From Octopus bimaculoides (Eukaryota), in assembly GCF_001194135.2 (NCBI RefSeq), contig NC_068993.1:23662215-23726214 (forward strand): a stretch of 64,000 nt of DNA. The letters are read 5' to 3'. Each line of letters begins with the position of its first letter. Positions within the stretch are counted from its first letter, which is position 1. Shown in pieces: positions 15,786 through 59,615 of this stretch. A program made the translations under genes and the position numbers. The notes under the pieces are model-generated. The model did no database searches. It had not been told where the DNA came from and worked only from the letters and a program-made list of their open reading frames with translations.

Positions 15786-18465
15786 GTAGAAACGACGCAT
15801 TGAAATGGACATAATGCGGGCAAGGCAAGATCTTGGAAAACTTGAGAAATGGTTAAGAGGACACTGGAAAATTGAAAAGGATCGACCGAGAGAAAATAGA
15901 GAAGAAATATAAAATACGGAAGAACTAGTTTGATGCAGTACCAGAACAGTTAAAACAGAGGATCAGATTTGTGAACATAAAATAAGCAGTTCCAGGAGAA
16001 CAGATTGTTCAAAAATAACCCGAAGCAATTCTTCCGAAAGTTAGGTGGAGACAACTGGGAAAATGTTTCTCCTGATGCAAATCAAGCCAAGGAGTTCTGG
16101 AGCGGATTATTGGGAAATAATGTGGCGGATAAAAGGGATGTGCTGTGGATAGGGGCTATCAAGGCAGAATTACAAGGAGGAAAGACATAAAGGAATATTT
16201 TTATAAGCACAGTTGACTTGAAAGAACAAGTGGTTAAAGTGCCTAAATGGAAAGCCCCCGGACCAAATGGGATTCATGGTCTTTGGCTGAAAAGATTCCA
16301 GCGGTGCATGAAAGACTAGCAGCCCAGTTGAATGAGTCTGTCCAGAAAGGTAGAGTCCCCGCGTGAATGGTGACTGGGAGGACATCACTTATAATGAAAA
16401 ATAGAAGAAAGGGGAATATTGTGGGGAGACTACCGTCTCGTACCATGCCTTAAAAATAATCTGGAAGACACTCACTGGAATATGCGTGACAAAGACATAC
16501 TTTCCTGACACAAGAAGAAATACTACAAGGGGAACAATAAGGAAGTAGGAAGAGTTCTGAGGACACCAAGGATCACCTGGTCATCGTTAAAACAGTTTAG
16601 AGGCATTGTAAAAAATGTCATACACCCATGTCTATGGCTTAGATTTACTTTAAGAAGGCATATGATATGATGCCTCATTCTTGGATCGTTGGATGCCTGC
16701 AGATGTTTGGTCTTGCTGACAATATCACAAATTTTGTGATACATAAGATGAAAGCGTGCAAAACCAGTTGTATGTAAGTAATGTATTCCTTGGAGAAGTT
16801 AATATTAAAAGGGGAATCTTCCAAGGTAACTGGTTTTCTCCGTTAGTATTTGTAATTGTAATAACACCCGTAAGAATCACACTTAGGAATGTTAAGATGC
16901 GTTGCCGATGTGGGAAGAAAGGCCCATCATTGAACCATCTTCTGTTTATGGATGACCTGAAATTATTAGGGACAACTGAAAAACAGATTCCTTAACCAAA
17001 ACGGTCCAGAAGTGTGGTAGGGCCATCGGTATGGAATTTCGGATTATCAAATGCTCAGTACTTAATATGAAAAGAAAGAATAACGCATCCTGCAGAGAAT
17101 TGCAGTTACCATTAGCAGAGACCATGGGTGACTCCGACTGTAGAGGGTATAGGCATATAGGGATTTTGGAGCTGGATGAAATTCTACGCAGATAAATGAA
17201 AGTCAGGTCAGCGAGGCATATCAAAAAAGAGTGAAGATAGTTTTGAAATCCAGCCTGAGTGCCAAAATTTGATTACTGCAACAAATATCTGAGCAGTTGC
17301 GGTGATCAGATATAGTGCGCCCTTCTTCAAATGAACTAAGGAGGAAATATGAACACTGGATAGAAGAACGAGAAAATTTATGACGCTGTTTGGGTCTCTA
17401 CACCCTAAAGCAAACATAAATGGACTGCTTATGAAAAGAAAGAATGGTGGCAGAGGACTAATTTGTATAGACCATTGTATAAGGAGTGAAAGGTGAACGC
17501 TTGCCAAGTATTTGATAGATAGTGATGAAGATCTGCTGCAATATGCCGCGAAATATGTGGGTATAAATGCAGATGAAATTATGGGCAAGGAAGAGTTTAA
17601 CCTAGGAGCTGAGAAGAAAAAAGAAGACCTTCTTGACATGAGAATGCTTGGACTGTTTGAAAGGAATACACTGGATGTTAAGGAAAATAGAGCATTTCGG
17701 GCATGGCGTGAGCGAGGTAATTTGAAGCGTGCCACCGAAGCCTGATCATTGCTGCACAAGACCAGGCTCTCGCTACCAAGTCAGAGAAATATATCATCTA
17801 TAAAACTTCTGACACCCAGAAATGCAGACTCAATGGAAAGAGTGTGGAGAATGCGACCCACTTGCTAAGTCGATGTGAGAGCCTTGCACAATGAGAATAC
17901 AAGAGCCGCTACGATAAAGTGAGTGTGTATCTTCATTGACTCTTATGCCATCAATACCGATATGAAGTAACAGAGAATGTGTATGACCATGTATCAAGTA
18001 AAGTTATGCAGGAGGATGGAAAAGTAACAATACTCTGGGACTATGATTTGCAGATGGATCGAAAACCGTCGGCCAGATATTGTCAAATTGAATAGAAGAG
18101 ACAAATACTGTCAGATCACTGATGTAACTATACCAAATGAAATGAATGTTGTGAGTAAAGTGGCTGAAAAAATTACCAAGTACTCCGAATTGAAAGTGAA
18201 AATATTAAGACTCAATGGAGTGCAAGATTGTATGGAATGTAAAAGTGATACCAGTGGTGATCAGAGCTTTGGGATCTATTCCATTGAAATTTCAAGACGT
18301 CTTATGGCAACTGGAAATCCCATGCAAGATTGATGTCTTGTAAAGCAGCCTTATTGGGCACAGCGCACATCTTAAGGAAAAAGTTATGTGTCTGAGGTCC
18401 TTGTTGTGACTTGACGAATGACAAGACTCCGGTACATTTTTACCTACACTGTGTTAAGAAGAAAT
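15783..18465 (+). mobile_element. R4/Dong-clade non-LTR retrotransposon, 5'-truncated ~2.7-kb pseudogene (RT, CCHC, RLE endonuclease, 3'UTR)
   Basis: Across frameshifts: KAPGPNGIHGLWLK, KKAYDMMPHSWI, RGIFQGNWFSPLVF, HLLFMDDLKL, AAQDQALAT, LWDYD..RRPDIV...ITDVTIP, AALLGTAHILRK; (AAT)n at the 5' junction and AAT/GAT repeats at the 3' junction. Confidence 0.92.
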
Positions 18466-21065: not shown

Positions 21066-21443
21066 AGGCGGAGGAGTGGCTGTGTGGTAAGTAGCTTGCT
21101 TACCAACGACATGGTCCCGGGTTCAGTCCAACTGCGTGGCATCTTGGGCAAGTGTCTTCTACTATAGCCTCGGGCCGACCAAAGCCTTGTGAGTGGATTT
21201 GGTAGACGGAAACTGAAAGAAGCCCGTCGTATATGTGTATATATATATGTGTGTATGTGTTTGTGTGTCTGTGTTTGTCCCCCCAACATCGCCCCCGTAA
21301 CTTAGCGGTTCGGCAAAAGAGACCGATAGAATAAGTACTAGGCTTCTAAAGAATAAGTCATGGGGGTGATTTGCTCGACTAAAGGCGGTGCTCCAGTATG
21401 GCCGCGGTCAAATAACTGAAACAAGTAAAAGAATAAAAAGAAT
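21066..21443 (+). mobile_element. tRNA-derived SINE family A, full length
   Basis: A-box-like TGGCTGTGTGG, B-box-like GGTTCAGTCC, central (TA/TG) microsatellite, tail GGCGGTGCTCCAGTATGGCC...ACTGAAACAAGTAAAAGAATAAAAAG. Confidence 0.85.
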
Positions 21444-21489
21444 TTAACTAAACTCCCGAATCGGTAAATAATGTTTTATCATCATTATC

Positions 21490-24660: not shown

Positions 24661-24721
24661 GAAACCATTATTTTTTATAGTCGTAGAAGTAGATGTGGTA
24701 TTAGTAGTGGCAGCATCAGCA

Positions 24722-24769
24722 ATAGTAGAAGAAGAAGAAGAAGAAGAAGAAGAAGAAGAAGAAGAAGAA

Positions 24770-24801
<32 letters not shown>

Positions 24802-25859
24802 AGTAGAAGAAGAAGAAGAATAAAAAGAAGGAGAAGGAGAAGGAGGAGAAGAAGAAGAAGAAGAAGAAGACGAAGAAAAAGAAGGAGAACAAAAAGAAGA
24901 AGAAGAAGATGAAGAAGAAAAGAAGAAGAAGAAGAAAAAGAAGAAGAAAAAGAAGAAGAAAAAGAAGAAGAAAAAGAAGGAGGAGGAGGAGGAGAAAAAG
25001 AAGAAGAAGAAGAAGAAGAAGAAAAAGAAGGAGAAGGAGAAGGAGAAGGAGAAAAAGAAGAAGAAGAAGAAGAAGAAGAAAAAGAAGAAGGAGAAGAAAG
25101 AGAAGAAGGAGAAGAAGAAGAAGAAGAAGAAGAAGAAGAAGAAGAAGAAAAAGAAGGAGAAGGAGAAGAAGAAGAAGAAGAAGAAGAAGAAGAAAAGAAG
25201 GAGAAGGAGAAGAAGAAGAAGAAGAAGAAGAAGAAGANNNNNNNNNNNNNNNNNNNNNNNNNNNNNNNNNNNNNNNNNNNNNNNNNNNNNNNNNNNNNNN
25301 NNNNNNNNNNNNNNNNNNNNNNNNNNNNNNNNNNNNNNNNNNNNNNNNNNNNNNNNNNNNNNNNNNNNNNNNNNNNNNNNNNNNNNNNNNNNNNNNNNNN
25401 NNNNNNNNNNNNNNNNNNNNNNNNNNNNNNNNNNNNNNNNNNNNNNNNNNNNNNNNNNNNNNNNNNNNNNNNNNNNNNNNNAAGAAGAAGAAGAAGAAGA
25501 AGAAGAAAAAGAAGAAGAAGAAGAAGAAGAAGAAAAAGAAGAAGAAGAAGAAGAAGAAGAAGAAAAAGAAGAAGAAGAATAAGAAGAAGAAGAAGAAGCA
25601 GAAGAAGAAAAAGAAGAAGAAAAAGAAGGAGAAGGAGAAGAAGAAAAAGAAGAAGAGGAAGAAGAAGGAGAAGAAAAAGAAGAAGAAGTAGAAGAAGAAG
25701 AAAAGAAGAGGAAGAAGAAGAAAAAGAAGAAAAAGAAGAAGAAGAAGAAGAAAAAGAAGAAGAAAAAGAAGAGGAAGAAGAAGAAGAAGAAGAAAAAGAA
25801 GAAGAAGAAGAAGAAGAAGAAGGAGAAGAAGAAGAAGAAAAAGAAGAAGAAGAAGAAGA

Positions 25860-25907
<48 letters not shown>
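24722..25907. repeat. ~1.2-kb (GAA)n-dominated polypurine tract (includes an N gap) ending in (GTA)n
   Basis: Directly visible; GAA units interrupted by AAA/GGA variants. Confidence 0.97.
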
Positions 25908-25909
<2 letters not shown>

Positions 25910-27198
25910 AATTGTCGTCAACATTGTTGCTTATCAAATTTAATCTCGGTTCCAATATTTGACTGCTACTTTAATTTATCGGCAGTGAAATGAGCATTAC
26001 AGTTTGTTATCCAGAATTGAATCATATGCAAAAATAAGACAAAAGACATCAAAGCGCCTGGCGATATATATGTTAGTTATATTTCTAGTATTTTCAATTA
26101 GTCGCTGAAAACCTTGTGAGTCTCGGAAAAAAAAAAGAAAAACTTTAGTTAGAACTTTTATACTTAGAAATAATCTGACATAAAATGTATATAAAAAAGC
26201 GTGGATTTAAGTGCATTTTGCGATTAAGAAATTTCCATGCAACATTCTTTGTATGTCTATACAGAGTTTTGGGGAAAATGAGAAACTAAACAGAATCTAC
26301 GGATGGGCGAACGTCTAAACTAAAAATAGAAGAGATGCCAAATCGGGTATTTCTCATTCTTTCTTATTGTCTCTCTGTTTAAAAACATTACTTTGTAATA
26401 ATCGTTTGGTACTGTTACATAATATTTGGGAGTAAAAATTGGTCAGCATGGTTGTTGTCGCTAATAGAATTTGAAAGGTTTCTTCAAACTTGACCCGAAT
26501 GCAATTGCGGATATTAAAAAAATTATCTGGATAATTTTTGGTGTATAACAATCAACGCGTTTTTCTCTGTGGCATTGCAAGACAATTTTACCCTCCACAC
26601 TATTGTCTAATTTGGTTATTTTGAATTTTCAAAAAATAATGCCCACAGTGGTGTAAAATAAGCAATCAGTAATCTCAATGACTCCTCTCTAACGGCACGG
26701 TGCGTAGATATATGACGTTGAGGTCCACTCCACTAGATCGTGAAGACGCTGTAGGGAATGTTTTATGTTGAGCTTTTAGGGCTAGTTGAGTTTCGTTAAT
26801 TTCATATCATGTGTCTATACTCGATAACCTAGTTTCATTTGACCGAGATTTTTTAGTTTTTGGTGCATTTCTGATGTCTCTGATGTCGCAAGATGGACAT
26901 CGATGTGTATGAGTCTTTACGCAAATACAAATGAGGAAAACTGAAAAGGTAAATTTACATTATTTTGTGTTATCCATTTTGCTCCACCTCAATTTATATT
27001 TTATATGTTGAAAGAGATCAGAGATAATTGTCTGAAATAGTGTTCTGAATATGTTAATGTATTTTTTAATGCATTTAATCAGTCATTTACTTAGCTGATT
27101 TAAATTTTGCAAGGTAGTGAACATTTGTAATATTATTTTCTCATTAAAAAATACAGTAAATATTATTCATTGTGCCCTACGTTGCACTAAGCTCATAG

Positions 27199-27718: not shown

Positions 27719-28214
27719 GTAAAATTCTAGACATTTGACATGTACAAGACACAGAAAATAGCACAGCCATCCATTTTGCATATAGTATTTTGAGTATCAT
27801 AGAAAATACGGAATGAAAAGAACACTTTGCGCATTCTTAAGGTATAAATAGTGGTGATACATATTACAGTGAATGAAATCAATGGAAGAAAGACGAGTAG
27901 TAACAATGCATATATTAACTTTGATATAAATAATTAATATAATACTCCTAAACTGAAATATACAGGAAATCCTTTCACAAACATTTAATAATGACAGTGC
28001 TTTTTCTTTTCGTTCATGATGTTCTCTAAATGTAATATCCACAGCTTTTCTTTTGATATCTTTATCTATCCAAATATATAAAATTATTATCCTGTTGTAA
28101 AACAAAAATGTATTGCTATTTTGATATTCCTTAAATAATCGTATCCTTCAAAAACAGGAATAACATACTTTCCTAGGATTCTAATATATTCATATTCCTA
28201 ATAATTACATGCAG

Positions 28215-28306
28215 GACAATTTCCCCAATGTTATCATTTGCTTAGATTATTATATATGGGAGAATAGAACAAAGAATATGATGAAATTTCTTTCAGATAT
28301 TTATTC
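28215..28306 (+). CDS. Candidate host-gene coding exon 3
   Basis: TGCAG acceptor, phase-0 compatible, open frame DNFPNVIICLDYYIWENRTKNMMKFLSDIY, GTAAGA donor. Confidence 0.33.
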
Positions 28307-30169
28307 GTAAGACACTGTGCTTCCATATTGTAATTGAAATGCCGATCAGGAAAAGTTAAATTAAGCCAACTGTCTTAAAGGAGAATATTACACTTATTTC
28401 ATATATATTCCAGCGAGAAAATAATCGATACTGTGTTATTTTGATTTACATTTATTCCTCTAGTTACTTCTTGTTGCCCATGAAGTTTGAGTGTGTGAAT
28501 AATCTAGCAGCATGTCGGTCTTGTGGATTCAGTGCGCTCTTCTGTAATTATTGTATTTGATAAATTTTCGTACACTGAGAGGTGAGTTATGTGAGATATA
28601 AATCTAGTTTTACTTTCGAATCATTGACCTAGTGGGTGAGGATATTATTATTCTTAGTTTAGAAAAACATTCGTTGTTGGAGATCAGTTTATTTACTCAT
28701 CACATAAGCATTTTGATTAGATAACGATCGGTTATATAACCCACGTGAATACAATATAGATATAGTTACTTAGCTTTTCCATACATCATCCTGTGGTACA
28801 CACCTGATTATATCAAGGGGGATGTTTCCAGGAATCACTGAGAGTTACGGGATTTTTACCAATGAAATACTCTTACTCAGGCAATTCCGCCGTGGTGGTC
28901 CAGTGAGCACCACTACTATAGCACTAGTCACACCTCCCATTTTCATTCCTTCAAAACCATCTTGATTGTATTCTTGTTACCTAACCCGGAGATACCTCTT
29001 GTGATACAAACCGCAATAGAATCAGTCAATGTTTGCAACCATTGATTAAATGTCAGAGTGAGACATTAGGAAAATCTTCTGAGAAATACTCATCCTATAG
29101 ATATATTTCCTTTTTCAGTTAGAATGAAGCCAGTTATACTTAAATAACATACTTGATGCATGAAAATACTATGTATGGTACTTGTATAGCATTCGTTTCT
29201 AAAACTATCACCCATTTGGTGAAGGAAACCTATATAGTTAAGCGACAATTTACATCAGATTCACAGTCAAAAAGCAATGTGCAATGTTAAGAATAATTGG
29301 ACAACGCATCCAAGTGCATCGATATAGATGAATCAAACACTTGATTAAATCAATTCTAGCATCTCCAGGGTTTTAAAGATATATTACTCAAAATACTTGA
29401 AATAGGAAATGAGGGCATCTGTTGCTGTGGTATTGAAACACAGAACATCAATTAATAAAGCCACATACTTCTTTATCCAACAGGAATTGTGTTTATGTAT
29501 CTAATACCGTTCTAAGAGGAAGAAGTGACATTTTGTAGCTGTAATGTTCACATATTTGTAAATGTTAAATAGCTGAAAAATGTTAACCACAGTTTGTTTT
29601 GCAGTGTGCTGGTATTATATTTGTTATGCAAATGAGAAGCTATTGTATACTGCATTCTTGAGTAGGAGCACATCGTTAAATTCATTGAAGAAGATATATT
29701 TTTTATGATTAAAATTACTGCTATTCTGAAGCGAATAAATTTAAACGCCTCCAGGATGGTAGCAAAGCAATGAACTTTCTGAACTACGATAAACTTCCAT
29801 TAGCCTTATGATATCCAATAAGTGCTAAGAAACAAACTAGAAATAATGAAAGGTCATGATAGCCAAGTCAACATGAACAGAGCAGCTGTTCTTAGTTTTA
29901 ACTATAAAAAATAAAACATCATTTACTGCTACAAATAATCCATAAGAGGACATCATATGTTACAACATATCTAATGCTCAAACATCCTAAAAGTGAAATA
30001 AATCAATGTAAAGCATTTCCACATATACACACAGTTTCTCCCCTCCATTCTTACTTAGATAGAATATTCTCCATTCTTTCATAGAAAGAATATGAATAAC
30101 AAATANNNNNNNNNNATATATATAGAATTCATTACGCATGAACACGATTATGCATACGTTCATATATAT

Positions 30170-30281
30170 GTACTAGTTACGGCTGTACATATTCTAAAAT
30201 TGGAACGATACAGTGAAGATTAGCATGGCCCCTGCGCAACGATGACACGCAAATTCGTGAAGCGTTCCATATTTTTTTTTT
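30170..30281 (+). ncRNA. U6: U6 spliceosomal snRNA, full-length copy, probably a (retro)pseudogene
   Basis: GTAC...GTACATATTCTAAAATTGGAACGATACAGTGAAGATTAGCATGGCCCCTGCGCAACGATGACACGCAAATTCGTGAAGCGTTCCATAT(T)n is nearly identical to metazoan U6. Substitutions: ACAGAGA>ACAGTGA (30214), ISL AAGGAT>AACGAT, and an altered 5' stem-loop. No TATA box at about -30. Confidence 0.95.
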
Positions 30282-30353
30282 AATGGCGGTACCCCAGCAT
30301 GGCCACAGCTCATGAGCTGAAGCTAGATAAAATGAAGAATAAAAAATGAAAAA
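30282..30353 (+). mobile_element. SINE-type 3' tail fused to the U6 oligo-T
   Basis: AATGGCGGTACCCCAGCATGGCCACAG...CTGAAGCTAGATAAAA..AAGAATAAAA aligns with the family A tail AAAGGCGGTGCTCCAGTATGGCCGCGG...CTGAAACAAGTAAAAGAATAAAA (21381-21440). Confidence 0.75.
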
Positions 30354-30355
30354 TA

Positions 30356-30742
30356 TCGTGGCGCTCCGTCGGTTATGATGACGAGGGTTCCAGATGATCT
30401 GATTATCGGAACAGACTGCTCGTGGAATTAACCTGCAAGGGACTGAGCACTCCACAGGCACATGTACACTTAACGTAGTTCGCGGGGAGATTCAACGTGA
30501 CACAGAATATGACAAGGCTGGCTGTTGAAATGCAGGTACAACAGAAACAGGAAGAAAGAGTGGGAGAAAGCTGTGGTCAAAAATTGCAGCAGGGTTCGCC
30601 ATCACCCACCGCCAAGCCTCGTGAAAACACCTTTAGGTGTTTTCGCTCAATAAACACTCACAACGCCCGGTCTGGGAATCGAAACCGTGACCCCACGACT
30701 GCGTGTCCGCTGTCCTAATCACTGGGCCATTGCGCCTCTACA
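30356..30742 (-). mobile_element. tRNA-derived SINE family C, full length
   Basis: Minus strand begins TGTAGAGGCGCAATGGCCCAGTGATTAGG (A box) ...GGTTTCGATTCCC (B box); a related head occurs at 57580-57695. Confidence 0.8.
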
Positions 30743-30830
30743 CAGAAACACACACATACACACACACACACATAAATATATATATATATATATATAAATA
30801 TATATATATATACATACATACGTACATACA

Positions 30831-30862
<32 letters not shown>

Positions 30863-31479
30863 CGTATATAGCATATATACATATATGTAATGATTGCATT
30901 ACTTAATTAAATGGACCCGTTTGGTACTGCATGACTACTTGCTTAGTTTAATTATATATATTTGAAAGACTATGCGGATTATGTAATACAGTTTTCGATG
31001 TGTAAGGATCATTTTTTTAAAGCTATGTTTCTTTTAAATATTATGAAATCTTCTATGAGGATGTTACTAATCTTTTGGGGAAAGAATTTTTTTTGGTCGG
31101 GGTTTGATGTGTTTTATTATTGTATTTGAAAAAAAGTTTACATTATTGAAGTGTGTTAGACATTAAAAATTATTAGTAATGTTCATGAAGTTCAATTAGC
31201 GTTTTCATACGTTCGTATTAATCATCATTGTATTGACTGACAGTCGTGTTGCGTTCTTGACAACCTTAGTAAAATGACTGATTTTTTTTCCCATTTTATA
31301 CCTTTTAGAAGGTTCCGATAAGTTGCATTTTTCGAATACGATTTTGACCAATCAGCATGCAGCTTAAGCGACACAATTTGTCGGGCGCACCGATATTGCT
31401 AGCACAGATCCCGCCTTTATATTAACCAATTTGCTTGTGGCTTACATGTATGGTTTTATGAGTGGGCAAACTTAGTTGG

Positions 31480-32990
31480 CTTCGATTGTTTTTATTTCAA
31501 TCGATAGGTTTCTTTTGTAATTTGTTTATATTCATATATCAAATATATTTTTAAATCTACATTATTATTCTTGTTATTTCCGTTCAGAATAGGTTTGAAC
31601 ATTTTAATGAAACGTTTTTCTTCTATCTTTCTTCCAATCATACTTGTGTCAAGTAGTTTGTGGAAGGGAAAAATTAGAAACATTTTCTGGCCACATGTTT
31701 CTATATGTTCACTGAATAGAATTTGGGAAACATTAGTGTTCCTGATTTATTATCTGTGAACTGGTGAGAAATTCCGATAATGCATTCCCTATGTCACCAA
31801 TGTATAGTTCCTCGTAATTAATGCAGTAGATCAAATTTCTGCTTTTTCAGTTCATATCTACATTTGAAAATATCTGTCCATTCGTTGTCTTAATGAATCT
31901 ACCAGTACGCATATATTGACACGTTCCATATCAGTTATCATTACTCTTTGATACAGTGAATGTTTTATCCTGTTTGTTCACGTTGAATTTTGCCTTTCTT
32001 AATTGTTTCTTTAGATTATGCGTTTGCCTTTTGCTTAAGATAAGTATTTGATTAGTTATTATGTTTATTTATTTAATTATTCACATTCTTTCATGATTGG
32101 TAAATTTGTTTTGATGATGATAAAAATGTATTAGTGATGCAGAAGGTGTGTTACTAGAAATGGCATTGTGATTCGTTGATGGGTTCATCTTTCTCGTGTT
32201 GCTTTTAGTCGTTCTATAGGTATCACTTTTTTCATTGTATGCTATTTTCTTTAAGTAGGAGAGGGTAGTTTTACTTTAGCAGAAATTCTTTGAGTTCTAT
32301 AAGTCGTATGTTCCTGGTATTTGGGTCATGTACTATAGTAAAACTTTTCCTGGCTAGACAGTACGGGATGTTGCGTTTTGTGTGTGTTAGGTGACATGAT
32401 GGAAATTTAGGTACTGGGGGGTATCTTGGCTTTTGTAATAGATATCAGTTCTAATTGTGGTGTTGCTTTTAATTACCACTATGTCAAGAAATGGGAATTC
32501 TGTGTTACTCATTTCTCTCGTTAATTTGAGACCAGGGTGTAAATTGTTGAGGAGGATGCTGAATTCCTCCAGATTGTTAGGGATTTGGTCCAAATTAGGA
32601 AACGATCATCGAGGTATCTTTTCCATGTGTCTTCTATATGCTTTCTAGAGCTCATGCCGTTATTTTCTTCAATTTTTAATATAGGTTTTGTTCCAACTAT
32701 TCCAGTACTGAGTTCGTAAACACTGGAGCAAATTGCGTCCCCATAGCTAATCTTAAATTTCGAGGTAGATTTTTTCCGTTGAAAAAGAATGTGTTCTTTT
32801 CGAGGATGAGGATGACCGCGTCTAGTATGAAGGTTACACTAAGCCTACTGGGAATCACTTCTCTATTTCTATTTCTTAACCATCAAAGCCAGAATCACAG
32901 CATGCCTTTTCATTTCATTAATAAGCTTTAGGCTTGTCACCGTCATTTTCTGAAATAGAAGTTCAATAATAATTAGTCAAATAAAATAAT
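31480..32990 (-). mobile_element. Penelope-like element: RT and GIY-YIG pseudogene
   Basis: LNNLHPGLKLTREMSNTEFPFLDIVVIK..TIRTDIYYKSQDTPQYLNF (PLE RT), INYEELYIGD.GNAL (GIY-YIG), IFPFHKL...RKIEEKRFIKMFKPILNG (C-terminus); the 31000-31480 flank may be the pseudo-LTR. Confidence 0.88.
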
Positions 32991-33024
32991 GACTCACATT
33001 ACATGTATCCTCGAATACCATCCG

Positions 33025-34931: not shown

Positions 34932-35366
34932 CTAGTAGCTCATTCCTAGTCTTTTCAGTGCCGTCTTAAACGTGTCTTCAAATCGTTCCGATAGTCCATT
35001 CGATTTCGGATGGTATAGTAGAGTAGTAATATGCTCCATTGCATGAATTTTGCAAACGTTTTTTAATTCCTTCGACATGAACTGTGTTCCGTTATCAGAC
35101 ACTAGAGTGTCAGTGATGCCATATCGCGCAAAAAGTTCGTCAAGATATTCCATTGTTATTTTGGAGGTTGGCATCATACATTTACATATTTCTGGCCATT
35201 TCATGTAACTGTCCACAGCTATCAGATAATACCCTCCATTTAACAGTCCTGCGAAGTCTATGTGTAATCTGGACCAAAGTATGTCAGTCTTGGACCAAAG
35301 GTGAATTTTTATAGGTGGTGCAATTGCTGCCAGGGCACATACCTGCCGGCTTTTACCAATTTTCAA
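34932..35366 (-). pseudogene. Gypsy integrase core (rve)
   Basis: LWSRLHIDFAG...VDSYMKWPE...FARYGITDTLVSDNGTQF...YHPKSNGLSERFEDTFK: DDE motifs visible. Confidence 0.92.
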
Positions 35367-35754
35367 TATCCTGATCCATATTCGGCCAGTACACGTAGCT
35401 CCTCATCATTGCTTTCATTTTCGCGATTCTTGGATGTCCCATGTGGAAGTCTTTTAGCATACAATTTTGCAAAGAAACAGCTATTATTACAACCATCTGG
35501 TTGTACATAAGTACGTCATCACATGTCGAATATCATTTTGAAACTGCGTTACGCTCGGCTATATGAGATTTCGTAATTTGTTTCTGAATTCACTATTTTT
35601 TTTCATTTATGTTATAAGCACAACCTTCTCGGCATTAATTTTAATTTCCTCCAATATGACTGGTAGTTGGCGTACTACGTTGTAGAGTATATTTTTTATT
35701 TCGATTTCCGCTTTTAATGCCGCTATTACTGTGTCTTCTAACGGTTCATTTTAT

Positions 35755-36609
35755 TTAGGTATAAAAGTGCCATAATGAGAGATCCGATGTTAAAATTGTT
35801 TTAAATTTCTTCGAAAATTTATGGCACCTGTCCGACCAATACCATTTAACCTCTTTTTTCAATATGTTGTTTAGTGGTGTTCTTAGCTCATGTATGTTCC
35901 CTATATATGTTTGATAATAGTTTGCGAGCCCTAAGAGTGCTTTTAACGTTGTAACATTTTTCGGGGGAGTCATAATTTGTATTGCAGTCGATCTTGAAGG
36001 ATCTGATCTGCAAACATCTTTATCGATAACTTACCCTAAATACTTTATTTCTAGCATGAAAAATTCGCATTTGACTCACTCCTTTGTTCCTTCAAATACC
36101 TTTTTGACATGTTCCTCATGCTGGCCACGAGACTCACTTTTTATGAGTAATGTCATCCAAGTAAGCTATAGCGAAATCCGTATCCCTTATGGGTGTTTAT
36201 CGTTAATATTTTCGAACATTTCTCCTCGACTTGTATCTGTAAATACGCCTCCGACAAGTCCAACTCTGAAACAAATTTCTTCCATTGAATTTCGCAAAAC
36301 TTTCCTCCGGACATGGTAATGGATAATTGTATGTCATCAGATATTCGTTATGCCTATTGAGAAATCAGCGCATACTCGTATTTTATTATTTTGTTTCTTT
36401 ACATAAACAGTTGGTGATGCCCATTCTGAATAATCAATTTTTTCTATAACTCCAAGCCTTTCAAGTCTATCCAATTTCTCGTTGACTTGATCCAACACCG
36501 TGAAAGTTACAGCTAGCTTCGGTTTAAATACCGCCACAGCGTTCTCTTCCACTTGAAATTTTACTTTTGTCTTGGTGCATCTACCTAATTCTTCAGAAAA
36601 AAAAAACAT
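35755..36609 (-). pseudogene. Gypsy reverse transcriptase remnants
   Basis: LERLGVIEKIDYSEWASPTVYVKKQNNKIRVCADFS; ELDLSEAYLQI; AYLDDI; LLGLANYY; frameshifts and an internal deletion. Confidence 0.9.
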
Positions 36610-37499
36610 CAGGAAAAATCTTTTTTAACTTCTTTTTTAACTCCTCCCATGCCTTAGTTGAACTGGCGTAAGAACCGTTTACATTATTGCAAAGAATATT
36701 TATGGGAATGTCCTTTAACTTAAATAGTTCCATCCAGTCTGTGCAAAATAGGTTTGTCGTATTTTTGAATACAAAATCTTTGGTTTTCAAAGTTTTTCAA
36801 CGAAATGATAACTCATTTATAATTTCGCCCCAAAATCGCGATTGTTTCCCTGTAATATCGCGTAATTTTCGAAGATTATTTCAACGTAGGCTTTTTTATT
36901 ATTCTTCCTGCATCATTGTTAATTTTCTTGATATTACTACCTATGTCAAACTGTAGTCTCGTATTCACATTATTTATTTTTATGGAGATAAATTTTCATT
37001 TTTGTGCCTCACTTTGCATTTGTGTTGACAATAAATTTTTCTCGAATTTCTTTATTTCGACCATAATGTGAATTCTTATGTCCGATTTTTCCACAGCCAA
37101 AGCATTTTATATTTTTATAAGGAGAATTTCTTTTAAAATGTATTTCTCCACACCCATACCATGTTTTGGTTCTTGACTGTTCTTTTTCTTTTTCTTTATC
37201 TGTTACAGGTCGACACATATATATTTGAATAATCTGTTTCAATTTTTTCTGCGTCCTGTTGTAAATATATAATCCTTTGGTATTCTTCAGCCACGGCCGG
37301 TAGAGTTAGTTTTGAATATTGTTCTAGTTTTGCCAATATCTTAGCCCGTTTCACTGCATCTTTTCTTGCAGTTAATCCTCGCACAAAGATTAGACATTCG
37401 AACATGTCCAGGATTAATTCATTTAGTTTAAAATTTTCATATTCACAGTTTATGATTTCGGCATACGTGACGAAATCCTCAGTTCCTTTTTTTTTTTTT

Positions 37500-38096
37500 T
37501 TAATTCAAGCACACCCAGCGAATATTAAATAGTGAACTTCTTTCACTGAATATTTTAGATAACAGGTTAATTGCTTTCTCGAAACAAATTTCGGATGGTT
37601 TTCTCGGCAGGATGTAATTACAATACTTTTCATGTTCTGCGGGTGATAATTTCTTCAAACGAAATCGTACATTCTTTCCTTCCGTCCAGATTTTACATTC
37701 TTCTTTGAATGTTCCTTCATATCTTCTGAAGTATGCAGAAAACGTAATCCCTTCTCCTGAATTATAAGTAAATTCTTCAATTGAATTAGCAATCCCGTCT
37801 GCCGAAAATGATCCTGAAATGTTTTTCGACTGCACCAATAATTTCAACAACTGTTGATTTTGCTGCTTTTGTTGTTGTAGTTGCTGTTGTACCTGTTGTT
37901 GCTGTTTCTGTTGTTCTTGTTGCTGTTTCTGTTGTTCTTGTTGCTGTTGTAGTTGCAGTTGCAACTGTTGCTGCTGTTGCTGTTGTTCTTGGTGTTGTAG
38001 TTGCAGTTGCAACTGTTGCTGCTGTTGCTGTTGTTCTTGCTGTTGTTGTTTTAGTTGCCGTTGCAACTGTACCAGGGAAGCTAATAGGTCTTCCAT
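37500..38096 (-). CDS. Gypsy gag N-terminal ORF with an expanded polyglutamine tract
   Basis: ATG at 38096 (MEDLLASL...), a long Q-rich tract, then DGIANSIEEFTY...FSAYFRRYE...YCNYILP...IFSERSSLFNIRW typical of this gag family; frame ends at a poly-T run. Confidence 0.8.
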   Translation of the reverse strand: MEDLLASLVQLQRQLKQQQQEQQQQQQQLQLQLQHQEQQQQQQQLQLQLQQQQEQQKQQQEQQKQQQQVQQQLQQQKQQNQQLLKLLVQSKNISGSFSADGIANSIEEFTYNSGEGITFSAYFRRYEGTFKEECKIWTEGKNVRFRLKKLSPAEHEKYCNYILPRKPSEICFEKAINLLSKIFSERSSLFNIRWVCLN

Positions 38097-38138
38097 GCTA
38101 AGAACGTCCACAGTGAGTTTCGAATGTCTCGCCACCAC

Positions 38139-38382
38139 TCTTATATCATTGAGTTTCGATATAGACTGCACTGTAAAAACATTATAACATTACAAAACCT
38201 AAATCAGTAACAGCGACCGTAACAAACTTATATCTCTTCCCAACGACTTCTACAACTGCCTTCATAGATGCGACTACACACACACTACACTGCACGTCGC
38301 ACTGTCAGTACGCATGCGCCTTTATAAGGTTTAGGACAGTTCACTTGCCCTGCTACAAGATTGTTAGGATTTCCCCTTAACA
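38139..38382 (-). repeat. 5' LTR of the Gypsy element
   Basis: Begins TGTTAAGG on the minus strand; contains a TATAAAG box; followed by the PBS. Confidence 0.85.
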
Positions 38383-40329
38383 TATACACACTTACTCTCT
38401 CACACACACATATATACATATATTACTGAACATGTGCTTACATGTGTATAGGTATTTATGTTTGCTTTCGTTTGTGTGGTTCGATTTCTGTGTTAACATA
38501 ATCTTAAGCGTAAAAATCGGAGAAAAGCTGCACGACGACCGATGTTTTTCATTTCTATTTCTTCGAAATTCCGTCACACAGATGCACCCAACTCATGCTT
38601 GCCATCGATATACAAACATAGCTCTGGCTGTTACACTCGTTTCCGGTTACCAACTATATCAATTTTTACAAGCACGTTACACGAAAAAATGTCAAGAAAT
38701 TTACTCACAGCCAGGTTTCTCTAATGCTTGTTTCTTGGACAAAAAAGTTTTCCGATTCCTTATCTGTTTGACTATTCTATTCGTTTTTTTTTATCCAATT
38801 ATTTTAAAAGCATTGAATATATATTATCAGCTGACTGTATTCAGATAGTCACTTAATTTGCTGCAGCTGCTACTTAAATGTTGAAATGCCAGTTACCTTT
38901 AATAAATAATATGCTCAACCAAAATGGCTTTCTCTCTGTATTTCAACAGCAATAATGAGATAACGTAATACGTTCAGTCTTTTTTTGTTTTCTTCCCTAG
39001 CTGCACGGTATATTGTCCTTATTTTGTGTATCTCGTTATTTTTCTAAACTAATACACATTTTACAATGCAATTTTTCTTTGAAAAGGAAAATTATTTTAA
39101 CTATGTTGATATGAGCTATTGACAAAACGTTTCACGTTGAGCTACATATCTAATGCATTTCTGATTTACATTCTGGAATGGAAAAACATGTTTTATAAAT
39201 CTTTACTGGTATTCTTAAGCTCTTCTTCTTCTTCTTCTTCTTCTTCTTCTTCTTCTTCTTCTTCTTCTTCTTCTTCTTCTTCTTCTTTAAAATTTACCTT
39301 CAACCTTTTATTTATTGAAAGCTTAACTCGAAATTCTTGCTGAAGTTACTATTTAACTTTGTTAGATGCAATTTTGTACCTCTATGGGTCGAGACCTAGA
39401 TAGAGTATTAAAATGTGGTTCGCTGAATGGAAGAATCATTGCCACTTTATGACAGAATCATTAATCATTGTTTTTCTTTAGCAGTAACCTTAATCTATTT
39501 TGAAAAGTAATCTTGCTATTCTTTTTCTTTCTCTTTTTATGACATATGCTGGCCTTCATAAATTTTGAGCATATTGTCCATTATTTTATTCTCAATGGTT
39601 CATTTCACTAAGACATTCTATCAAAGACGGAGGAAAATACTGAAACACATTTAACTCTCTTTATTTGTATTAGCAATCGTGAAGCAGGAGTTAGGATAGT
39701 TTCGTTTCAGAATATTGGTGAGCTGACTCAAAGTTGATAAAAGATAATGTTGTAGGATATAGAAATAAATACATGATAAGAAAATTATGTATCTCCTTGT
39801 TATTTCAAATATTAAAACTTGTATGAACAAAAATAAATAATGCCTAAGAATGAGCAATTGAGTTAAGTACGTAATGAGATAATATTAAAATTTTATATGC
39901 ATCAAATGTAGCGTAATAGAAATCAGTAACTCTACCGAAACGCGTTTTTTCAAGTTTGCATAGATAAATCTAATCGAGCTGATAAAGTGTTTAAATTGTA
40001 AAGGATTTCAACAAAGAAATAATGCTTTGGTATTATTTTTATATATTTTGTCGCATCACTTCATTAATTGACAGATTAAAGAAAAAAATTAACATTTAGC
40101 CCACATGTATTTTATGTTTCCTGCATAGCACCTTTCATGTCTAAGAGCATTTATAACTTGCCTGTTACTTCTTTCAATTTATTTGGCTTCTTGCGTCACA
40201 TCTCCATTGTCTTTATCCAAAGAAAATATTATTCCGACAGAAAAAGAGTTGGCTAAAGGTATGGCAACTTAATATATCGAGTGTCACATAATGCCTTGTT
40301 CTATCATGGCCACAGTCTAATATCTGAAA

Positions 40330-40725
40330 TAATTATATCAATGGTTTTCTCGGTGGTGGTAGTTGCAGGACATCAAGATCTTGCCTCATCTTCGAGACTC
40401 ACCCTTCCCTCCTAAATTCAGCTGCCCACATTTGCACTGTTGACAAAGCTGTAGCGTCATTCCCTAACGTAGCAACCATGTCAGCATGAATTTTATTGAG
40501 GGATAAATACTTTTGTTGCAAGTACTTAGTAACACAACGATGCCAAATTTTGTCAATTTTCTAGAGAGCTCACTATTAGTTGCATTTGAAGTTTTCATTG
40601 AAGTGTCAGACAATTTACCTGAATAGACACAACGCAGTTATTGATAAAAATAGTTGAAATTAATGCATAGGTCGAGCATCCCTTCTTCATAGTCAGCTGA
40701 TGGACGCTTCAGCCCAACCAGCCAC
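40330..40725 (-). mobile_element. mariner 5' end: left TIR plus transposase HTH
   Basis: Minus-strand KIWHRCVTKYLQQK..IHADMVATLGNDATALSTVQMWAAEFRR...PATTTTEKTID; TIR-like GGTTGGGCTGAAGCGTCCATCAGCTGAC at ~40692-40720 resembles the TIR at ~20400. Confidence 0.85.
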
Positions 40726-42984: not shown

Positions 42985-45440
42985 TAAGACATGGGCCCAC
43001 CACACAGTAATGCGAAGGGCACAGGCCCAACTTATGGGTAGTAAGAGCTCTGCAGGCTTGGCTGATAATCTTACTAGAGATGGTGTCTCGATAAAAATAT
43101 CGGTTGAAGGCTAACCTTAAAACACAAACCTCATTGCTGAGTGAAAATGTCTAATACAAATGTATCAAACAACGATGTTAATGAGGCTGGAACCAAAGGT
43201 GAAAGCCTTTCGCCTGGTAGGTGCCCTGTCGTTTGGCAGCGCAGGCCCGATTGATATCCAGAGACTGCTTGTAGACAAAGCCAGAGGCAGAGAATAAGGT
43301 GGGATAAGGAGGTAAACCGAATGATGATTCAATGCTGGATCAGGATTGAACCCAGTAGAAAGGTATTCCGACAACGAACGAAAGGAAATTGAGATAGCGC
43401 CCAGTAGAACCGTTACTAAATGTTTGTCTCCTTGCCACGGCCAGAATAGTCAGGGAAGTATTAGATAGTTGGAAAGACTGGATAGCCTGGTACCGTAGGC
43501 TGCAGATAAGATGAATGATTTTCCCGGGAGACTCACTGTCAGGCCTGATTTTCTGTCTTTCTTTGATCCCGCTAACAAATGTGTTAAAGGAAACCACCAT
43601 GGGCTGTTGATGCTACGGACAAATATAAAGTATTTTCTGTACATGGACAACCGAAAACTTTTCGCTAAAGGCACCATGGAACAGAGATACTTTACTAAAA
43701 TTGTTCAGCGTTTCAGCAATGACATCGGAACGAGCATGGGTCTGCACAAATGTGCCGGTATCACACTGAGAAGAGGCAAATTATTCAACACTGAAAACAC
43801 TTCACTCAATATAGACATAGAAAGTAGAGAATTAGACCACAACAACCCATACAAATATCTAGGAATAGAAGAAACACCTAAAATACAACACACAGACATG
43901 CAAAGGAAATTTAGGATAGACAATTACAGATTACAGAAGAGTTACACTAATATCAAACACTGAATTTAATGCTAAAAGTAAGATGATAGATAAACACCCT
44001 AGCCATACCAGTCATGAATTACAGCTTTAACATAATAAACTGGAAGCTCAGTGAATTGAGAAACCTAGATAGGAAAACCAGAAAACAACTAACATCGTGC
44101 CGACGACACCACCCCAAAGCAGACGCAGGAAGAATATATATATATACTCTGCTGAGAAGGGGGTCGTGACCTGATAAAGATAGAAAACTACTATAAAATA
44201 ACAACAGTTGGACTAACAAAGAACCTTGAAACAAAGAGTGGAAGACTACTGCATTTAGTAAAACAGTATGAGAACAAGAATACAAAATACAAAATAGCAG
44301 TAAACTACATTGATACACTCACCTCAGATGACAACATAGCAGAAATGGTCAGAGAGACAAAAAACATGGAAACTGAATTAGAAAAGATACTGAAGAAGAA
44401 ATGGAGAGAAAATCCCTTCTTGGCCAATACCCTGCAAGGCTTGACAGAGAAGAAGTGAGCCTATATATAAGCCAACAATGGCCTCAAAAGCTCTGGACTA
44501 AAAACCGAAATGGAAGGACCGATTCTCGCTGCATAATACCAATGCCTGACTACAGAATATGCAGAATGTGCAACCAGCCCAATGAGACAGTTGACAACAT
44601 CATTTCGGGTTGCCCAGTCCTTGCCAAGTCTGAATATGTATACAGGCATAAGAAAGTAAGCAGTTATATCAACCGGACCACATGCCAACATTATAACATC
44701 AATACTGACAGCAGGTGGTATAAGCATGCTCCAAGCAAGGTGCAAGAAAATATGTAGGCCACAATCATCTAGGATATGGTGGTTCAAACCGACAAACAAA
44801 TAAAAGCTAATTACTCAGACATAATAGTCGAGGATTGAGGAACAAAACACCTGCTTACCGACAGACATTGCAGTCTCTTCTGATCAAAATGTTGTCAAAA
44901 AGAAGTGGAGAAATTTTCGAAGTACAAATACCTCGAAATTGAAGTATTCTAAACGTGAAGCATTAAGGTAAAAAAACAATACCAATAATAACTGGAGCAT
45001 TGGGCATGATAAACAATCATATAAACAAAAGTGTAGAAACTATACCTAGATACTCAGCACTACACACTGTCATAAAAAAATAGCCCTGCTAGGAACCGCC
45101 CACATCCTACGCAAGAGACTATCAATCGAATAATGCAACCGAAACAAAACAACTAACTGCACACACTCTATACAGTAGTTACCCAGTGAAATACATTCCC
45201 ACCAGCAAGCGAGAAAGCCAAAGCATTACACACTCAATACTCAATGCATGCAGTAACACAAAAAAAGATAGCATGATACCTCGAGGAAAAATAAAACTAA
45301 CACAATACAGAACTGGGAAGAGTTCGCACACTGCCAAAAAAGAACACACAATACTGCACACACTCCAGCAAAACAGAGGTGTAGTAAGTGATGCAGTAGA
45401 AATTTGCCTCAATCTAGCAAATATTGAACAGTTATATACT
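42985..45440 (+). mobile_element. R4/Dong-clade element, internally deleted or composite: 5'UTR and N-terminus, then RT C-half, CCHC, RLE and 3'UTR
   Basis: After AATAATAATAAT: RIRWDKEVNRMMIQCW..EPS (N-terminal motif); YMDN(D)RKLFAK, YKYLGI, CRMCNQPNETVDNIISGCPVLAKSEYVYRH, LGTAHILRKRLSIE*; ends in (AAT)(GAT)n. Confidence 0.88.
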
Positions 45441-59277: not shown

Positions 59278-59615
59278 CTAGCAATGTTACCCGGCGTTAC
59301 TCGGGATTAAAATGGTAGAGAGTTTTATTGCTCATATTGTTTCGGTCATGTGGCTCATGACATGGTGGAGCCCCACATTTAGTCGAAGAAATGGACCCCA
59401 GTATTTATTCTTTGCATGCATAGTACTTATTCTATCGGAGTGTTTTGCCAAATGGCTAAGTTGTGGGGGCGTAAACACAGAAACATCGATTGTCAAGCAA
59501 ATGTGGGGGTACAAACACAGACATACACGCACATACATATATACATATATATATACATACTTATATATACACGTGTATGTATATATATATACATATATAT
59601 AAATATGTATATATA
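59278..59615 (+). mobile_element. Helentron/DINE-1-like (HINE) non-autonomous element
   Basis: ACTAGC...ACCCGGCGTTACTCGGG 5' sub-terminal hairpin followed ~250 bp later by an (AC/AT) microsatellite; a second similar head ACTAGC...ACTCGG.AATTCCCGGG at ~59938. Confidence 0.5.

What the first reader, a model, noticed from the sequence alone, without database searches (positions are those of the whole stretch)
30170..30353. Full-length U6 snRNA fused directly to a SINE-type 3' tail: U6 retro-chimera or U6-headed SINE
Seen: a complete U6 (5' GTAC stem to CCATAT plus 10 T) is followed with no spacer by ~70 nt that aligns with the 3' tail of SINE family A in this window (21381-21440). It lacks an upstream TATA at about -30 and carries likely inactivating changes (ACAGTGA; broken ISL pair). 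Known: U6/LINE-1 3' chimeras form during retrotransposition in vertebrates (template switching or RtcB ligation), and snRNA-headed SINEs (SINEU, from U1/U2) exist in crocodilians. Inference: this is the analogous product in a non-vertebrate genome, using the LINE-recognised SINE tail. If multicopy, it would be a U6-derived SINE family, a type I am not aware of being described.
Basis: partly seen in the sequence, partly recalled or inferred. Interest (0 to 1): 0.72.

Follow-up and report, generated by a model that had tools for sequence, protein, structure and literature searches.

The report
U6 pseudogene fused to SINE tail
A dead copy of the spliceosomal U6 RNA is joined head-to-tail to the last ~72 bases of a local SINE/LINE 3' tail, which is most likely one retrotransposition accident of a kind already described in platypus and lizard, here in what looks like an octopus genome.

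Summary
Rfam finds one full-length U6 at 30170-30276 (102.8 bits). It ends in a run of 10 T (30272-30281) and continues without a spacer into ~72 nt (to ~30353). That stretch aligns significantly with the 3' end of the tRNA-SINE at 21067-21445 and with a truncated tail at 3175-3241 (0 of 2000 shuffles reach either score).

The U6 looks dead. It reads ACAGUGA instead of ACAGAGA, has a G-to-C change in the internal stem-loop, and has no TATA box at -30.

The best reading is a single chimeric retrocopy: U6 RNA joined to a 5'-truncated SINE/LINE tail RNA, then inserted by the LINE machinery that recognises that tail. Doucet et al. 2015 describe this class for stringent LINEs and their SINEs (platypus L2/Mon-1; lizard L2, RTE, AnolisSINE2), so it is a new member of a known kind.

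The "U6-headed SINE family" idea could not be tested. No route to the source genome or its reads was available. The T10 tract, a Pol III terminator between head and tail, and the lack of an internal promoter argue against it. No target-site duplication was found, and a 10-N gap lies 55 nt upstream. Interest is modest.

The parts
30170..30271 (+). Body of a full-length U6 snRNA copy, from the 5' stem-loop GUAC...GUAC to CCATA. It is a pseudogene: ACAGUGA at 30210-30216 and a G-to-C change in the ISL within 30236-30244.
   Evidence: Rfam RF00026 at 102.8 bits, model positions 1-105.
30272..30281 (+). T10 tract: the U6 3' U-tract or terminator, and the junction. The last 1-2 T may already belong to the tail (TTAAWGG in the other tails).
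   Evidence: alignments.
30282..30353 (+). 5'-truncated SINE/LINE-type 3' tail (AATGGCGGTACCCCAGCATGGCC...GAATAAAAAATGAAAAAT) that runs to the usual A-rich, GAAT/TGAA-like 3' terminus.
   Evidence: Local alignment against two independent tails, 0 of 2000 shuffles reach either score; nhmmer E 1.2e-15; multiple alignment A1.
30106..30115 (.). 10-N assembly gap at -64 to -55 of the U6. It hides the place where a proximal sequence element (PSE) would lie.
30117..30169 (+). 5' flank of the U6. No TATA box at -31 to -24 (T-GAACACG); (TA)n at -9 to -1 and at -53 to -45.
   Evidence: For comparison, real U6 genes in L040 and L041 have TATATAA / TATAAATA at about -31 to -24.
30355..30741 (-). Neighbouring tRNA-derived SINE ('SINE B') in the opposite orientation. 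Its 3' end abuts the 3' end of the tail. This is context, not part of the chimera.
   Evidence: Reverse-complemented A-box and B-box motifs (CACTGGGCCAT at 30720-30730; GGGAATCGAAACC at 30674-30686).
21067..21445 (+). Reference full-length tRNA-SINE ('SINE A'). Its last ~67 nt (21379-21445) are the closest in-window match to the tail.
3175..3241 (-). Second tail copy, 5'-truncated and not attached to a SINE head. It shares GTACCCCAGCATG exactly with the U6-linked tail.

Best explanation
This is a single-event chimeric retropseudogene. Shown: a complete U6 sequence, ending in its U-tract, is joined directly and in the same orientation to the last ~72 nt of a tail that SINEs in this genome carry at their 3' ends. 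Inferred: during target-primed reverse transcription, a LINE reverse transcriptase that recognises this tail began copying a SINE or LINE RNA from its 3' end. After about 72 nt it reached a break or fell off, then continued on a U6 snRNA from its 3' U-tract to its 5' end (template switch). Alternatively, the two RNAs were ligated beforehand (RtcB-type joining of U6 to a 5'-OH RNA fragment) and copied as one molecule. Either way the product was inserted as one piece. Without the external U6 promoter it is transcriptionally dead. It has since gained, or inherited from a variant source gene, three changes at otherwise invariant U6 positions. A tRNA-SINE inserted tail-to-tail next to it in a separate event.
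For: (1) Full-length U6, model positions 1-105 at 102.8 bits. (2) The junction lies exactly at the U-tract, with no spacer and no poly(A). (3) The tail homology is significant against two independent copies and extends to the normal SINE 3' terminus. (4) There is no TATA box at -30, whereas two real U6 genes fetched for comparison have one at about -31 to -24. (5) ACAGAGA has become ACAGUGA and one ISL pair is broken. (6) Chance adjacency is unlikely. There are 7 tail-like hits in 60,283 non-N bases. My arithmetic puts the chance of a same-strand tail starting within +/-3 nt of the U6 end at about 4e-4. (7) Precedent: U6 chimeras with stringent LINEs and their SINEs are known in platypus (40 of 47 analysed U6 copies, with L2/Mon-1) and in lizard (six with AnolisSINE2, three each with L1, L2 and RTE) (PMC4476161). 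RNA ligation route: PMC6789731. Fungal WEIRD-MgSINE chimeras: PMC2104539.
Against: No target-site duplication brackets the unit; the only shared flank sequence is (TA)n low complexity. This is weak evidence against, because platypus chimeras have TSDs of only 1-9 bp, and only in 72.5% of cases, and because the 3' side is occupied by another SINE. The T-run has 10 T, more than the 4-5 U of mature human U6. That fits a nascent or oligouridylated U6, later slippage, or a genomic terminator; one real U6 gene fetched here has T9. Only one locus could be examined. No reads, orthologous locus or copy count were available.
Confidence: 0.62

Rival explanations
1. Two independent events. A U6 copy (a decayed gene duplicate or an older pseudogene) was already here, and a 5'-truncated SINE/LINE tail later inserted by chance, or by endonuclease preference, exactly at its T-rich terminator.
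For: Truncated tails not attached to a SINE head do occur in the window (3175-3241, about 40293-40330). Homopolymer T/A runs are common LINE endonuclease targets (general knowledge). Real U6 genes can have T9 terminators. The PSE position is hidden by the gap. No TSD supports a single event.
Against: The expected chance of a same-strand tail starting within a few nt of the U6 end is about 4e-4 from the window's tail density. No TSD flanks the tail alone either: a T-run on the left, ATCGTGG on the right. There is no TATA box at -30, so the U6 does not look like a former gene. A tail-less U6 retrocopy would be hard to make with a LINE that needs its own tail (PMC4476161).
Confidence: 0.17
2. One copy of a multicopy, self-propagating U6-headed SINE family.
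For: The architecture (small-RNA head plus LINE-recognised tail) is that of a SINE. snRNA-headed SINEs without known internal promoters exist (SINEU, with U1/U2 heads; PMC4494074). The copy number in the source genome is unknown.
Against: Only one U6 and one such junction occur in the 64 kb window. [quoted passage not shown] About 650 U6-antisense ORFs turned up in the protein libraries, 225 sequences were inspected, and none carries the tail. That negative is weak, because octopus SINE ORFs are absent from those libraries.
Confidence: 0.07
3. Assembly artefact: two repeats (U6 and a SINE tail) joined wrongly in a gap-rich draft assembly.
For: The window has 13 N-runs (3,717 N), one of them 55 nt upstream of the U6. 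Both parts are repeated sequences.
Against: The junction lies in uninterrupted sequence about 165 nt from the gap. The two parts share nothing but a short T/A run that could mislead an assembler.
Confidence: 0.05
4. A working variant U6 gene that merely has a SINE fragment downstream.
For: The 5' stem-loop keeps its pairing through a double change (G3-C17 to A3-U17) and has a UACG (UNCG-type) loop. Nucleotides 20-107 are 96.6% identical to canonical U6.
Against: The ACAGAGA box is changed, an ISL pair is broken, and there is no TATA box at -30. The 5' stem-loop differences may simply be the lineage's normal U6 form.
Confidence: 0.04

Closest known systems
U6 chimeras with stringent LINEs and their SINEs (platypus U6-L2 / U6-Mon-1; Anolis U6-L2, U6-RTE, U6-AnolisSINE2), Doucet et al. 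2015, PMC4476161
   Same: U6 in sense orientation, joined directly to a short 5'-truncated LINE/SINE 3' part that ends in the element's own simple-repeat terminus. No poly(A). TSDs tiny or absent. No U6 promoter.
   Different: Here the host is apparently an octopus rather than a vertebrate. The U6 is full-length, whereas almost all platypus U6-L2 chimeras have a 5'-truncated U6. The partner LINE is unidentified, and only one locus has been seen.
Mammalian U6/LINE-1 chimeric pseudogenes (Buzdin 2002; Garcia-Perez 2007; Moldovan 2019, PMC6789731)
   Same: Full-length U6, sense orientation, junction at the U-tract, 5'-truncated retroelement 3' part. Template switching or RtcB ligation are the candidate mechanisms.
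   Different: The L1 chimeras end in poly(A) and have 7-20 bp TSDs. Here the 3' part is a non-poly(A) tail and no TSD is seen. The U-tract is 10 T rather than 4-5.
SINEU (U1/U2-headed SINEs of crocodilians), Kojima 2015, PMC4494074
   Same: An snRNA-derived 5' part plus a retrotransposon-type 3' part, probably born by template switching.
   Different: SINEU are proven multicopy families with subfamilies and shared internal deletions, with heads from Pol II snRNAs. Here the head is U6, a Pol III terminator sits between head and tail, and there is no evidence of more than one copy.
Fungal bipartite chimeras (MINE = WEIRD-MGL; WEIRD-MgSINE), Gogvadze et al. 2007, PMC2104539
   Same: A full-length cellular non-coding RNA fused to a 5'-truncated LINE or SINE outside vertebrates.
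   Different: The 5' partner there is not U6, and those chimeras are flanked by 10-20 bp direct repeats.

Membership tests
U6 spliceosomal snRNA (Rfam RF00026), as a sequence family | Covariance-model score above the gathering threshold over the full model | tested here: met
   102.8 bits against a gathering score of 44, model positions 1-105 of 105.
Functional U6 snRNA gene | Invariant ACAGAGA box | tested here: not met
   ACAGUGA at 30210-30216. All but one of the 90 U6-antisense ORFs retrieved from other organisms encode the canonical box.
Functional U6 snRNA gene | Intact internal stem-loop (ISL) | tested here: not met
   G-to-C change at position 71. The predicted energy of the 24-nt ISL segment goes from -2.7 to -0.5 kcal/mol and the canonical helix is lost.
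Functional U6 snRNA gene | TATA box at about -30 (type 3 Pol III promoter) | tested here: not met
   -31 to -24 reads T-GAACACG. Comparison genes in L040 and L041 have TATATAA / TATAAATA there.
Functional U6 snRNA gene | Proximal sequence element (PSE) at about -55 to -65 | not testable with these tools
   A 10-N gap covers -64 to -55, and no cephalopod PSE consensus was at hand.
Functional U6 snRNA gene | Pol III terminator T-run after the 3' end | tested here: met
   T10 at 30272-30281.
U6/retroelement chimeric retropseudogene (Doucet 2015 group 'associated with repeats') | U6 in sense orientation, directly joined at its 3' U-tract to a retroelement 3' part | tested here: met
   No spacer between T10 and the tail, and both parts are on the + strand.
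U6/retroelement chimeric retropseudogene | The retroelement part is 5'-truncated and reaches the element's own 3' terminus | tested here: met
   It aligns with the last ~67 nt of the SINE at 21379-21445, through the A-rich GAAT end.
U6/retroelement chimeric retropseudogene | Target-site duplication bracketing the whole unit | tested here: inconclusive
   Only (TA)n matches between the flanks. The 3' flank is occupied by another SINE. TSDs of 1-9 bp or none are normal for L2-type chimeras.
U6/retroelement chimeric retropseudogene | Empty orthologous site, or insertion as one unit | not testable with these tools
No cephalopod DNA was found in the reachable collections.
SINE family (U6-headed) | Many dispersed copies with the same head-tail junction | not testable with these tools
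   One copy in the 64 kb window. The external searches were uninformative.
SINE family (U6-headed) | Can be transcribed as one unit from an internal promoter through to the tail | tested here: not met
   T10, a Pol III terminator, lies between head and tail. No internal snRNA promoter is known (PMC4494074). That this blocks propagation is inference, not experiment.
SINEU (Kojima 2015) | Head derived from U1 or U2 snRNA | tested here: not met
   The head is U6.

The most novel reading that the evidence does not exclude
The locus is one member of a multicopy U6-headed SINE family in octopods. It would be propagated from a master copy that sits behind a foreign promoter, and would be the first SINE with a U6 head.
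Probability: 0.07. Interest if true: 0.7.

Novelty: new member of a known kind. Interest (0 to 1): 0.3.

Why it matters
If the reading is right, joining U6 to a LINE-recognised tail, which Doucet et al. 2015 called a general property of non-LTR retrotransposons on vertebrate evidence, also operates in a mollusc whose genome is dominated by tRNA-SINEs. Chimeras like this are the proposed first step in the birth of new SINEs: a small RNA acquires a LINE tail. A census of them in cephalopods would show which small RNAs get captured and why only tRNA heads went on to amplify. As a single locus it is a tidy example, not a surprise.

Tried and rejected

(2) Antisense-ORF trick: the minus-strand ORF 30177-30461 reads through the tail and the U6.
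- A search with its 61-aa tail+U6 part gave 90 U6-antisense ORFs from other eukaryotes.
- The exhaustive HMMER search with the 94-aa ORF gave 650 hits, of which 150 were listed.
- None carries the tail peptide. Alignments that seemed to reach into the tail were low-complexity K/F-rich extensions.
- The window's own ORF is not in these libraries, and a SINE-B ORF found nothing. These negatives therefore say little about the source genome.

(3) Metagenome scan for the junction: 0 hits. The control scan for the tail core returned 39 GC-rich bacterial chance matches and no SINE. The collection holds no such host DNA.

(4) ENA contigs reached through TE and U6 proteins (L040-L043) contain no SINE A or SINE B, so they are not close relatives. 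They served only as examples of real U6 genes with TATA boxes.

(5) TSD search: nothing beyond (TA)n.

(6) Conserved hairpin in the tail: the U6-linked tail has a perfect palindrome, CAGCTCATGAGCTG, at 30306-30319. RNAalifold on seven tails gives only -0.79 kcal/mol and places its weak helix elsewhere. No claim is made.

(7) Partner LINE: the RT fragments in the window have no tail-like 3' end nearby, so the LINE clade remains unknown. The TGAA/GAAT-like terminus hints at an L2/CR1-type partner, but that was not tested.

(8) Twin priming with the neighbouring SINE B was considered and rejected. In twin priming the RNA 3' ends lie at the outer borders; here they meet in the middle.

(9) Reading the T10 as the poly(A) of a minus-strand element was rejected, because the tail homology is on the + strand.

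(10) Scans of genome contigs (prokaryotes) and viral contigs were not run, because they cannot contain the host genome.

Full report
WHAT IS THERE

Rfam's U6 model (RF00026) matches 30170-30276 on the + strand at 102.8 bits (gathering score 44), covering model positions 1-105 of 105. It is the only gathering-level Rfam match in the window. No second U6 is found by BLAST.

After CCATA (30267-30271) come exactly 10 T (30272-30281), then AATGGCGGTACCCCAGCATGGCC....

The ~72 nt that follow the T-run align with two other sequences. One is the 3' end of the + strand tRNA-derived SINE at 21067-21445. The other is a separate, 5'-truncated tail on the minus strand at 3175-3241. The local alignment scores are 38 and 35. 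Dinucleotide shuffles give a mean of about 15 and maxima of 33 and 30, and 0 of 2000 reach either observed score.

A three-sequence nhmmer profile recovers these tails at E about 1e-14 to 1e-15. It also finds four weaker tails, most at the ends of further SINE-A fragments (SINE-A copies).

The homology starts at T(T)AAWGGCGGT and runs to the A-rich GAAT/TGAA-like terminus where the full SINE also ends.

STATE OF THE U6

The three later differences all hit positions that are otherwise constant:
- A24U.
- A45U, which turns the ACAGAGA box into ACAGUGA.
- G71C, in the internal stem-loop (ISL). The predicted energy of the 24-nt ISL segment drops from -2.7 to -0.5 kcal/mol and the canonical helix is lost.

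Of the 90 U6-antisense ORFs retrieved from other organisms, all but one encode the canonical box.

The 5' stem-loop still folds (-3.2 kcal/mol). It keeps pair 3-17 through a double change (G-C to A-U) and has a UACG loop. This may simply be the lineage's normal form. I could not obtain a bona fide U6 gene of this organism to check.

Upstream, -31 to -24 reads T-GAACACG, which is not a TATA box. Two genuine U6 genes fetched from unrelated ENA contigs have TATATAA or TATAAATA at about -31 to -24, with T6 and T9 terminators. The place where a proximal sequence element (PSE) would lie, -64 to -55, is a 10-N assembly gap. The copy therefore looks like a pseudogene without a promoter, with the PSE untestable.

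SURROUNDINGS

Directly after the tail, at 30355-30741, lies a second type of tRNA-derived SINE on the minus strand. Its reverse-complemented B box is at 30674-30686 and its A box at 30720-30730. The two elements therefore meet 3' end to 3' end. It is the only copy of that SINE in the window.

The flanks 28000-30169 and 30742-33000 are otherwise unique within the window.

No direct repeat brackets the U6+tail unit, with or without the neighbouring SINE. Only (TA)n is shared.

The window is a gap-rich draft with 13 N-runs, full of retroelement debris. The best named relative of its integrase fragment is an Octopus bimaculoides protein at 62% identity. This agrees with my recollection that these SINEs are octopus SINEs, but the organism was not proven.

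HOW IT MOST LIKELY AROSE

The anatomy is that of the chimeric retropseudogenes first described for U6/L1: a full-length U6 in sense orientation, a junction at the U-tract, and then a 5'-truncated retroelement part that reaches its own 3' end.

Doucet et al. 2015 (PMC4476161) showed that the same products form with stringent LINEs and with the SINEs those LINEs mobilise:
- In platypus, 40 of 47 analysed U6 copies are joined to L2 or Mon-1. TSDs are only 1-9 bp and occur in 72.5% of cases. L2 primes from a TGAA repeat.
- In Anolis, six are joined to AnolisSINE2 and three each to L1, L2 and RTE.

They argue that a LINE which must recognise its own tail can only carry U6 along if U6 is attached to that tail. 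This explains why such genomes lack U6-poly(A) copies.

The present tail has no poly(A) and ends ...AATGAAGAATAAAAAATGAAAAAT. That fits this class, although the partner LINE was not identified.

Two routes to the joint are known. One is a template switch of the reverse transcriptase from the tail RNA to the 3' end of U6. The other is prior RNA ligation by RtcB (PMC6789731). The sequence cannot separate them. The 10-T tract is longer than the 4-5 U of mature human U6. That leans toward a 3'-extended U6 and hence toward template switching, but slippage after insertion would give the same picture.

Steps shown: the two parts, their orientation, the exact junction, the missing TATA box, and the disabling substitutions. 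Steps inferred: that they arrived in one event, and by which enzyme.

RIVALS

(a) Two separate events. The density of tail-like sequences is 7 in 60,283 non-N bases. From that, the chance of a same-strand tail beginning within +/-3 nt of the U6 end is about 4e-4 (my arithmetic). Target preference for T-runs could raise this. The tail alone has no TSD either. A tail-less U6 retrocopy would be hard to explain with a stringent LINE. I give this 0.17.

(b) A U6-headed SINE family. This could not be tested, because no route to the source genome worked:
- The junction is absent from the metagenome collection. So is the SINE tail itself, apart from bacterial chance hits.
- About 650 U6-antisense ORFs exist in the protein libraries, but none of the 225 sequences inspected carries the tail.
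- A SINE-B ORF finds nothing there, which shows that the host genome is simply not represented.

Mechanistically, a T10 tract between head and tail would terminate Pol III before the tail. Metazoan U6 also relies on an external promoter that retrocopies lose (quotes the lack of internal snRNA promoters). SINEU shows that snRNA-headed families can nevertheless exist, so I keep 0.07.

(c) Assembly artefact: 0.05. The junction is in continuous sequence about 165 nt from the nearest gap.

(d) A working variant U6 gene: 0.04. This is contradicted by ACAGUGA, the broken ISL pair and the missing TATA box.

COMPARISON AND NOVELTY

It works like, and meets the testable criteria of, the U6/retroelement chimeras of Doucet et al. 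2015. Only the TSD criterion is inconclusive, and the empty-site criterion is untestable here.

It is not a SINEU, because the head is U6 rather than U1 or U2. It cannot be called a SINE without evidence of copy number.

In the papers I searched, I found no report of U6-tail chimeras in molluscs or other invertebrates. The non-vertebrate precedent I found involves a different RNA: WEIRD-MGL and WEIRD-MgSINE in a fungus. The finding is therefore a new member of a known kind in a new phylum. It is not a new kind.

VERDICT

The more exciting family reading remains possible but unlikely, and could be settled by a single BLAST against the source genome. Interest is 0.3.

Noticed in passing
window 30355-30741 (-): A ~390-nt tRNA-derived SINE of a second type ('SINE B'). 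Its 3' end abuts the 3' end of the U6-linked tail. It is the only copy in the window. On its strand, the A-rich tail end reads as T5/T6 runs, which would serve as its Pol III terminator.
   Followed up: partly
window 21067-21445 (+); fragments 2574-2975 (+), 11013-11150 (+), 59310-59471 (-): Copies of a tRNA-SINE ('SINE A') with an internal (TG/TA)n microsatellite and the shared 3' tail. Several copies abut N-gaps, which suggests the internal microsatellite breaks the assembly.
   Followed up: partly
window 3175-3290 (-) and about 40287-40345 (+): Tail-only, 5'-truncated copies not attached to a SINE head. Heavy 5' truncation is more typical of LINE 3' ends, so a LINE with this tail probably exists in the genome.
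   Followed up: partly
window 30306-30319 (+): A perfect 14-nt palindrome, CAGCTCATGAGCTG, inside the U6-linked tail. Other tails have imperfect versions (CAGACTAATGACTG, CGGTCAAATAACTG). It could be a reverse-transcriptase recognition hairpin, but RNAalifold on 7 tails gave no support (-0.79 kcal/mol).
   Followed up: yes
window 34932-38171 (-): Remains of an LTR retrotransposon. The integrase core (Pfam rve, 2.8e-8) has its best named hit in Octopus bimaculoides XP_014780156 at 62%. A 223-aa ORF with a long polyQ tract matches DUF7083 (7.8e-15).
   Followed up: partly
window 7435-7908 (+), 16756-16995 (+), 43511-43963 (+), 46946-47377 (-): Reverse-transcriptase fragments (Pfam RVT_1, mostly below the gathering score), from LINE-like and LTR-like elements. 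None has a tail-like sequence at its 3' side.
   Followed up: partly
window 63309-63686 (+): piggyBac-type transposase fragment (Pfam DDE_Tnp_1_7, 1.7e-7).
   Followed up: no
window 30750-30900: Sub-threshold Rfam 'miRNA' hits (mir-297 at 52 bits against a gathering score of 90, mir-3149, mir-1277 and others) all fall on a (CA)n/(TA)n/(CATA)n microsatellite. They are low-complexity artefacts.
   Followed up: yes
window, 13 N-runs (e.g. 5678-6440, 8280-9104, 30106-30115): 3,717 N (5.8% of the window). Most gaps are bordered by TA/CA microsatellites or homopolymeric-codon repeats, which is typical of a short-read draft assembly.
   Followed up: no
window 24675-25955: More than 1 kb of CT/AG-rich low-complexity sequence (long poly-S/L/F or poly-K/R/E 'ORFs'), interrupted by a gap.
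   Followed up: no
L040 3057-3162 (-), L041 303-409 (-): Intact U6 genes on unrelated ENA contigs (114.9 and 114.3 bits), with TATA boxes at about -31 to -24 and T6 / T9 terminators. The protein libraries hold hundreds of spurious 'proteins' that are antisense translations of U6.
   Followed up: yes
protein P0031 (ncbi/jgi, 1,067-bp contig): Another organism's U6-antisense ORF encodes the same ACAGTGA variant of the ACAGAGA box. This is probably an unrelated pseudogene.
   Followed up: no
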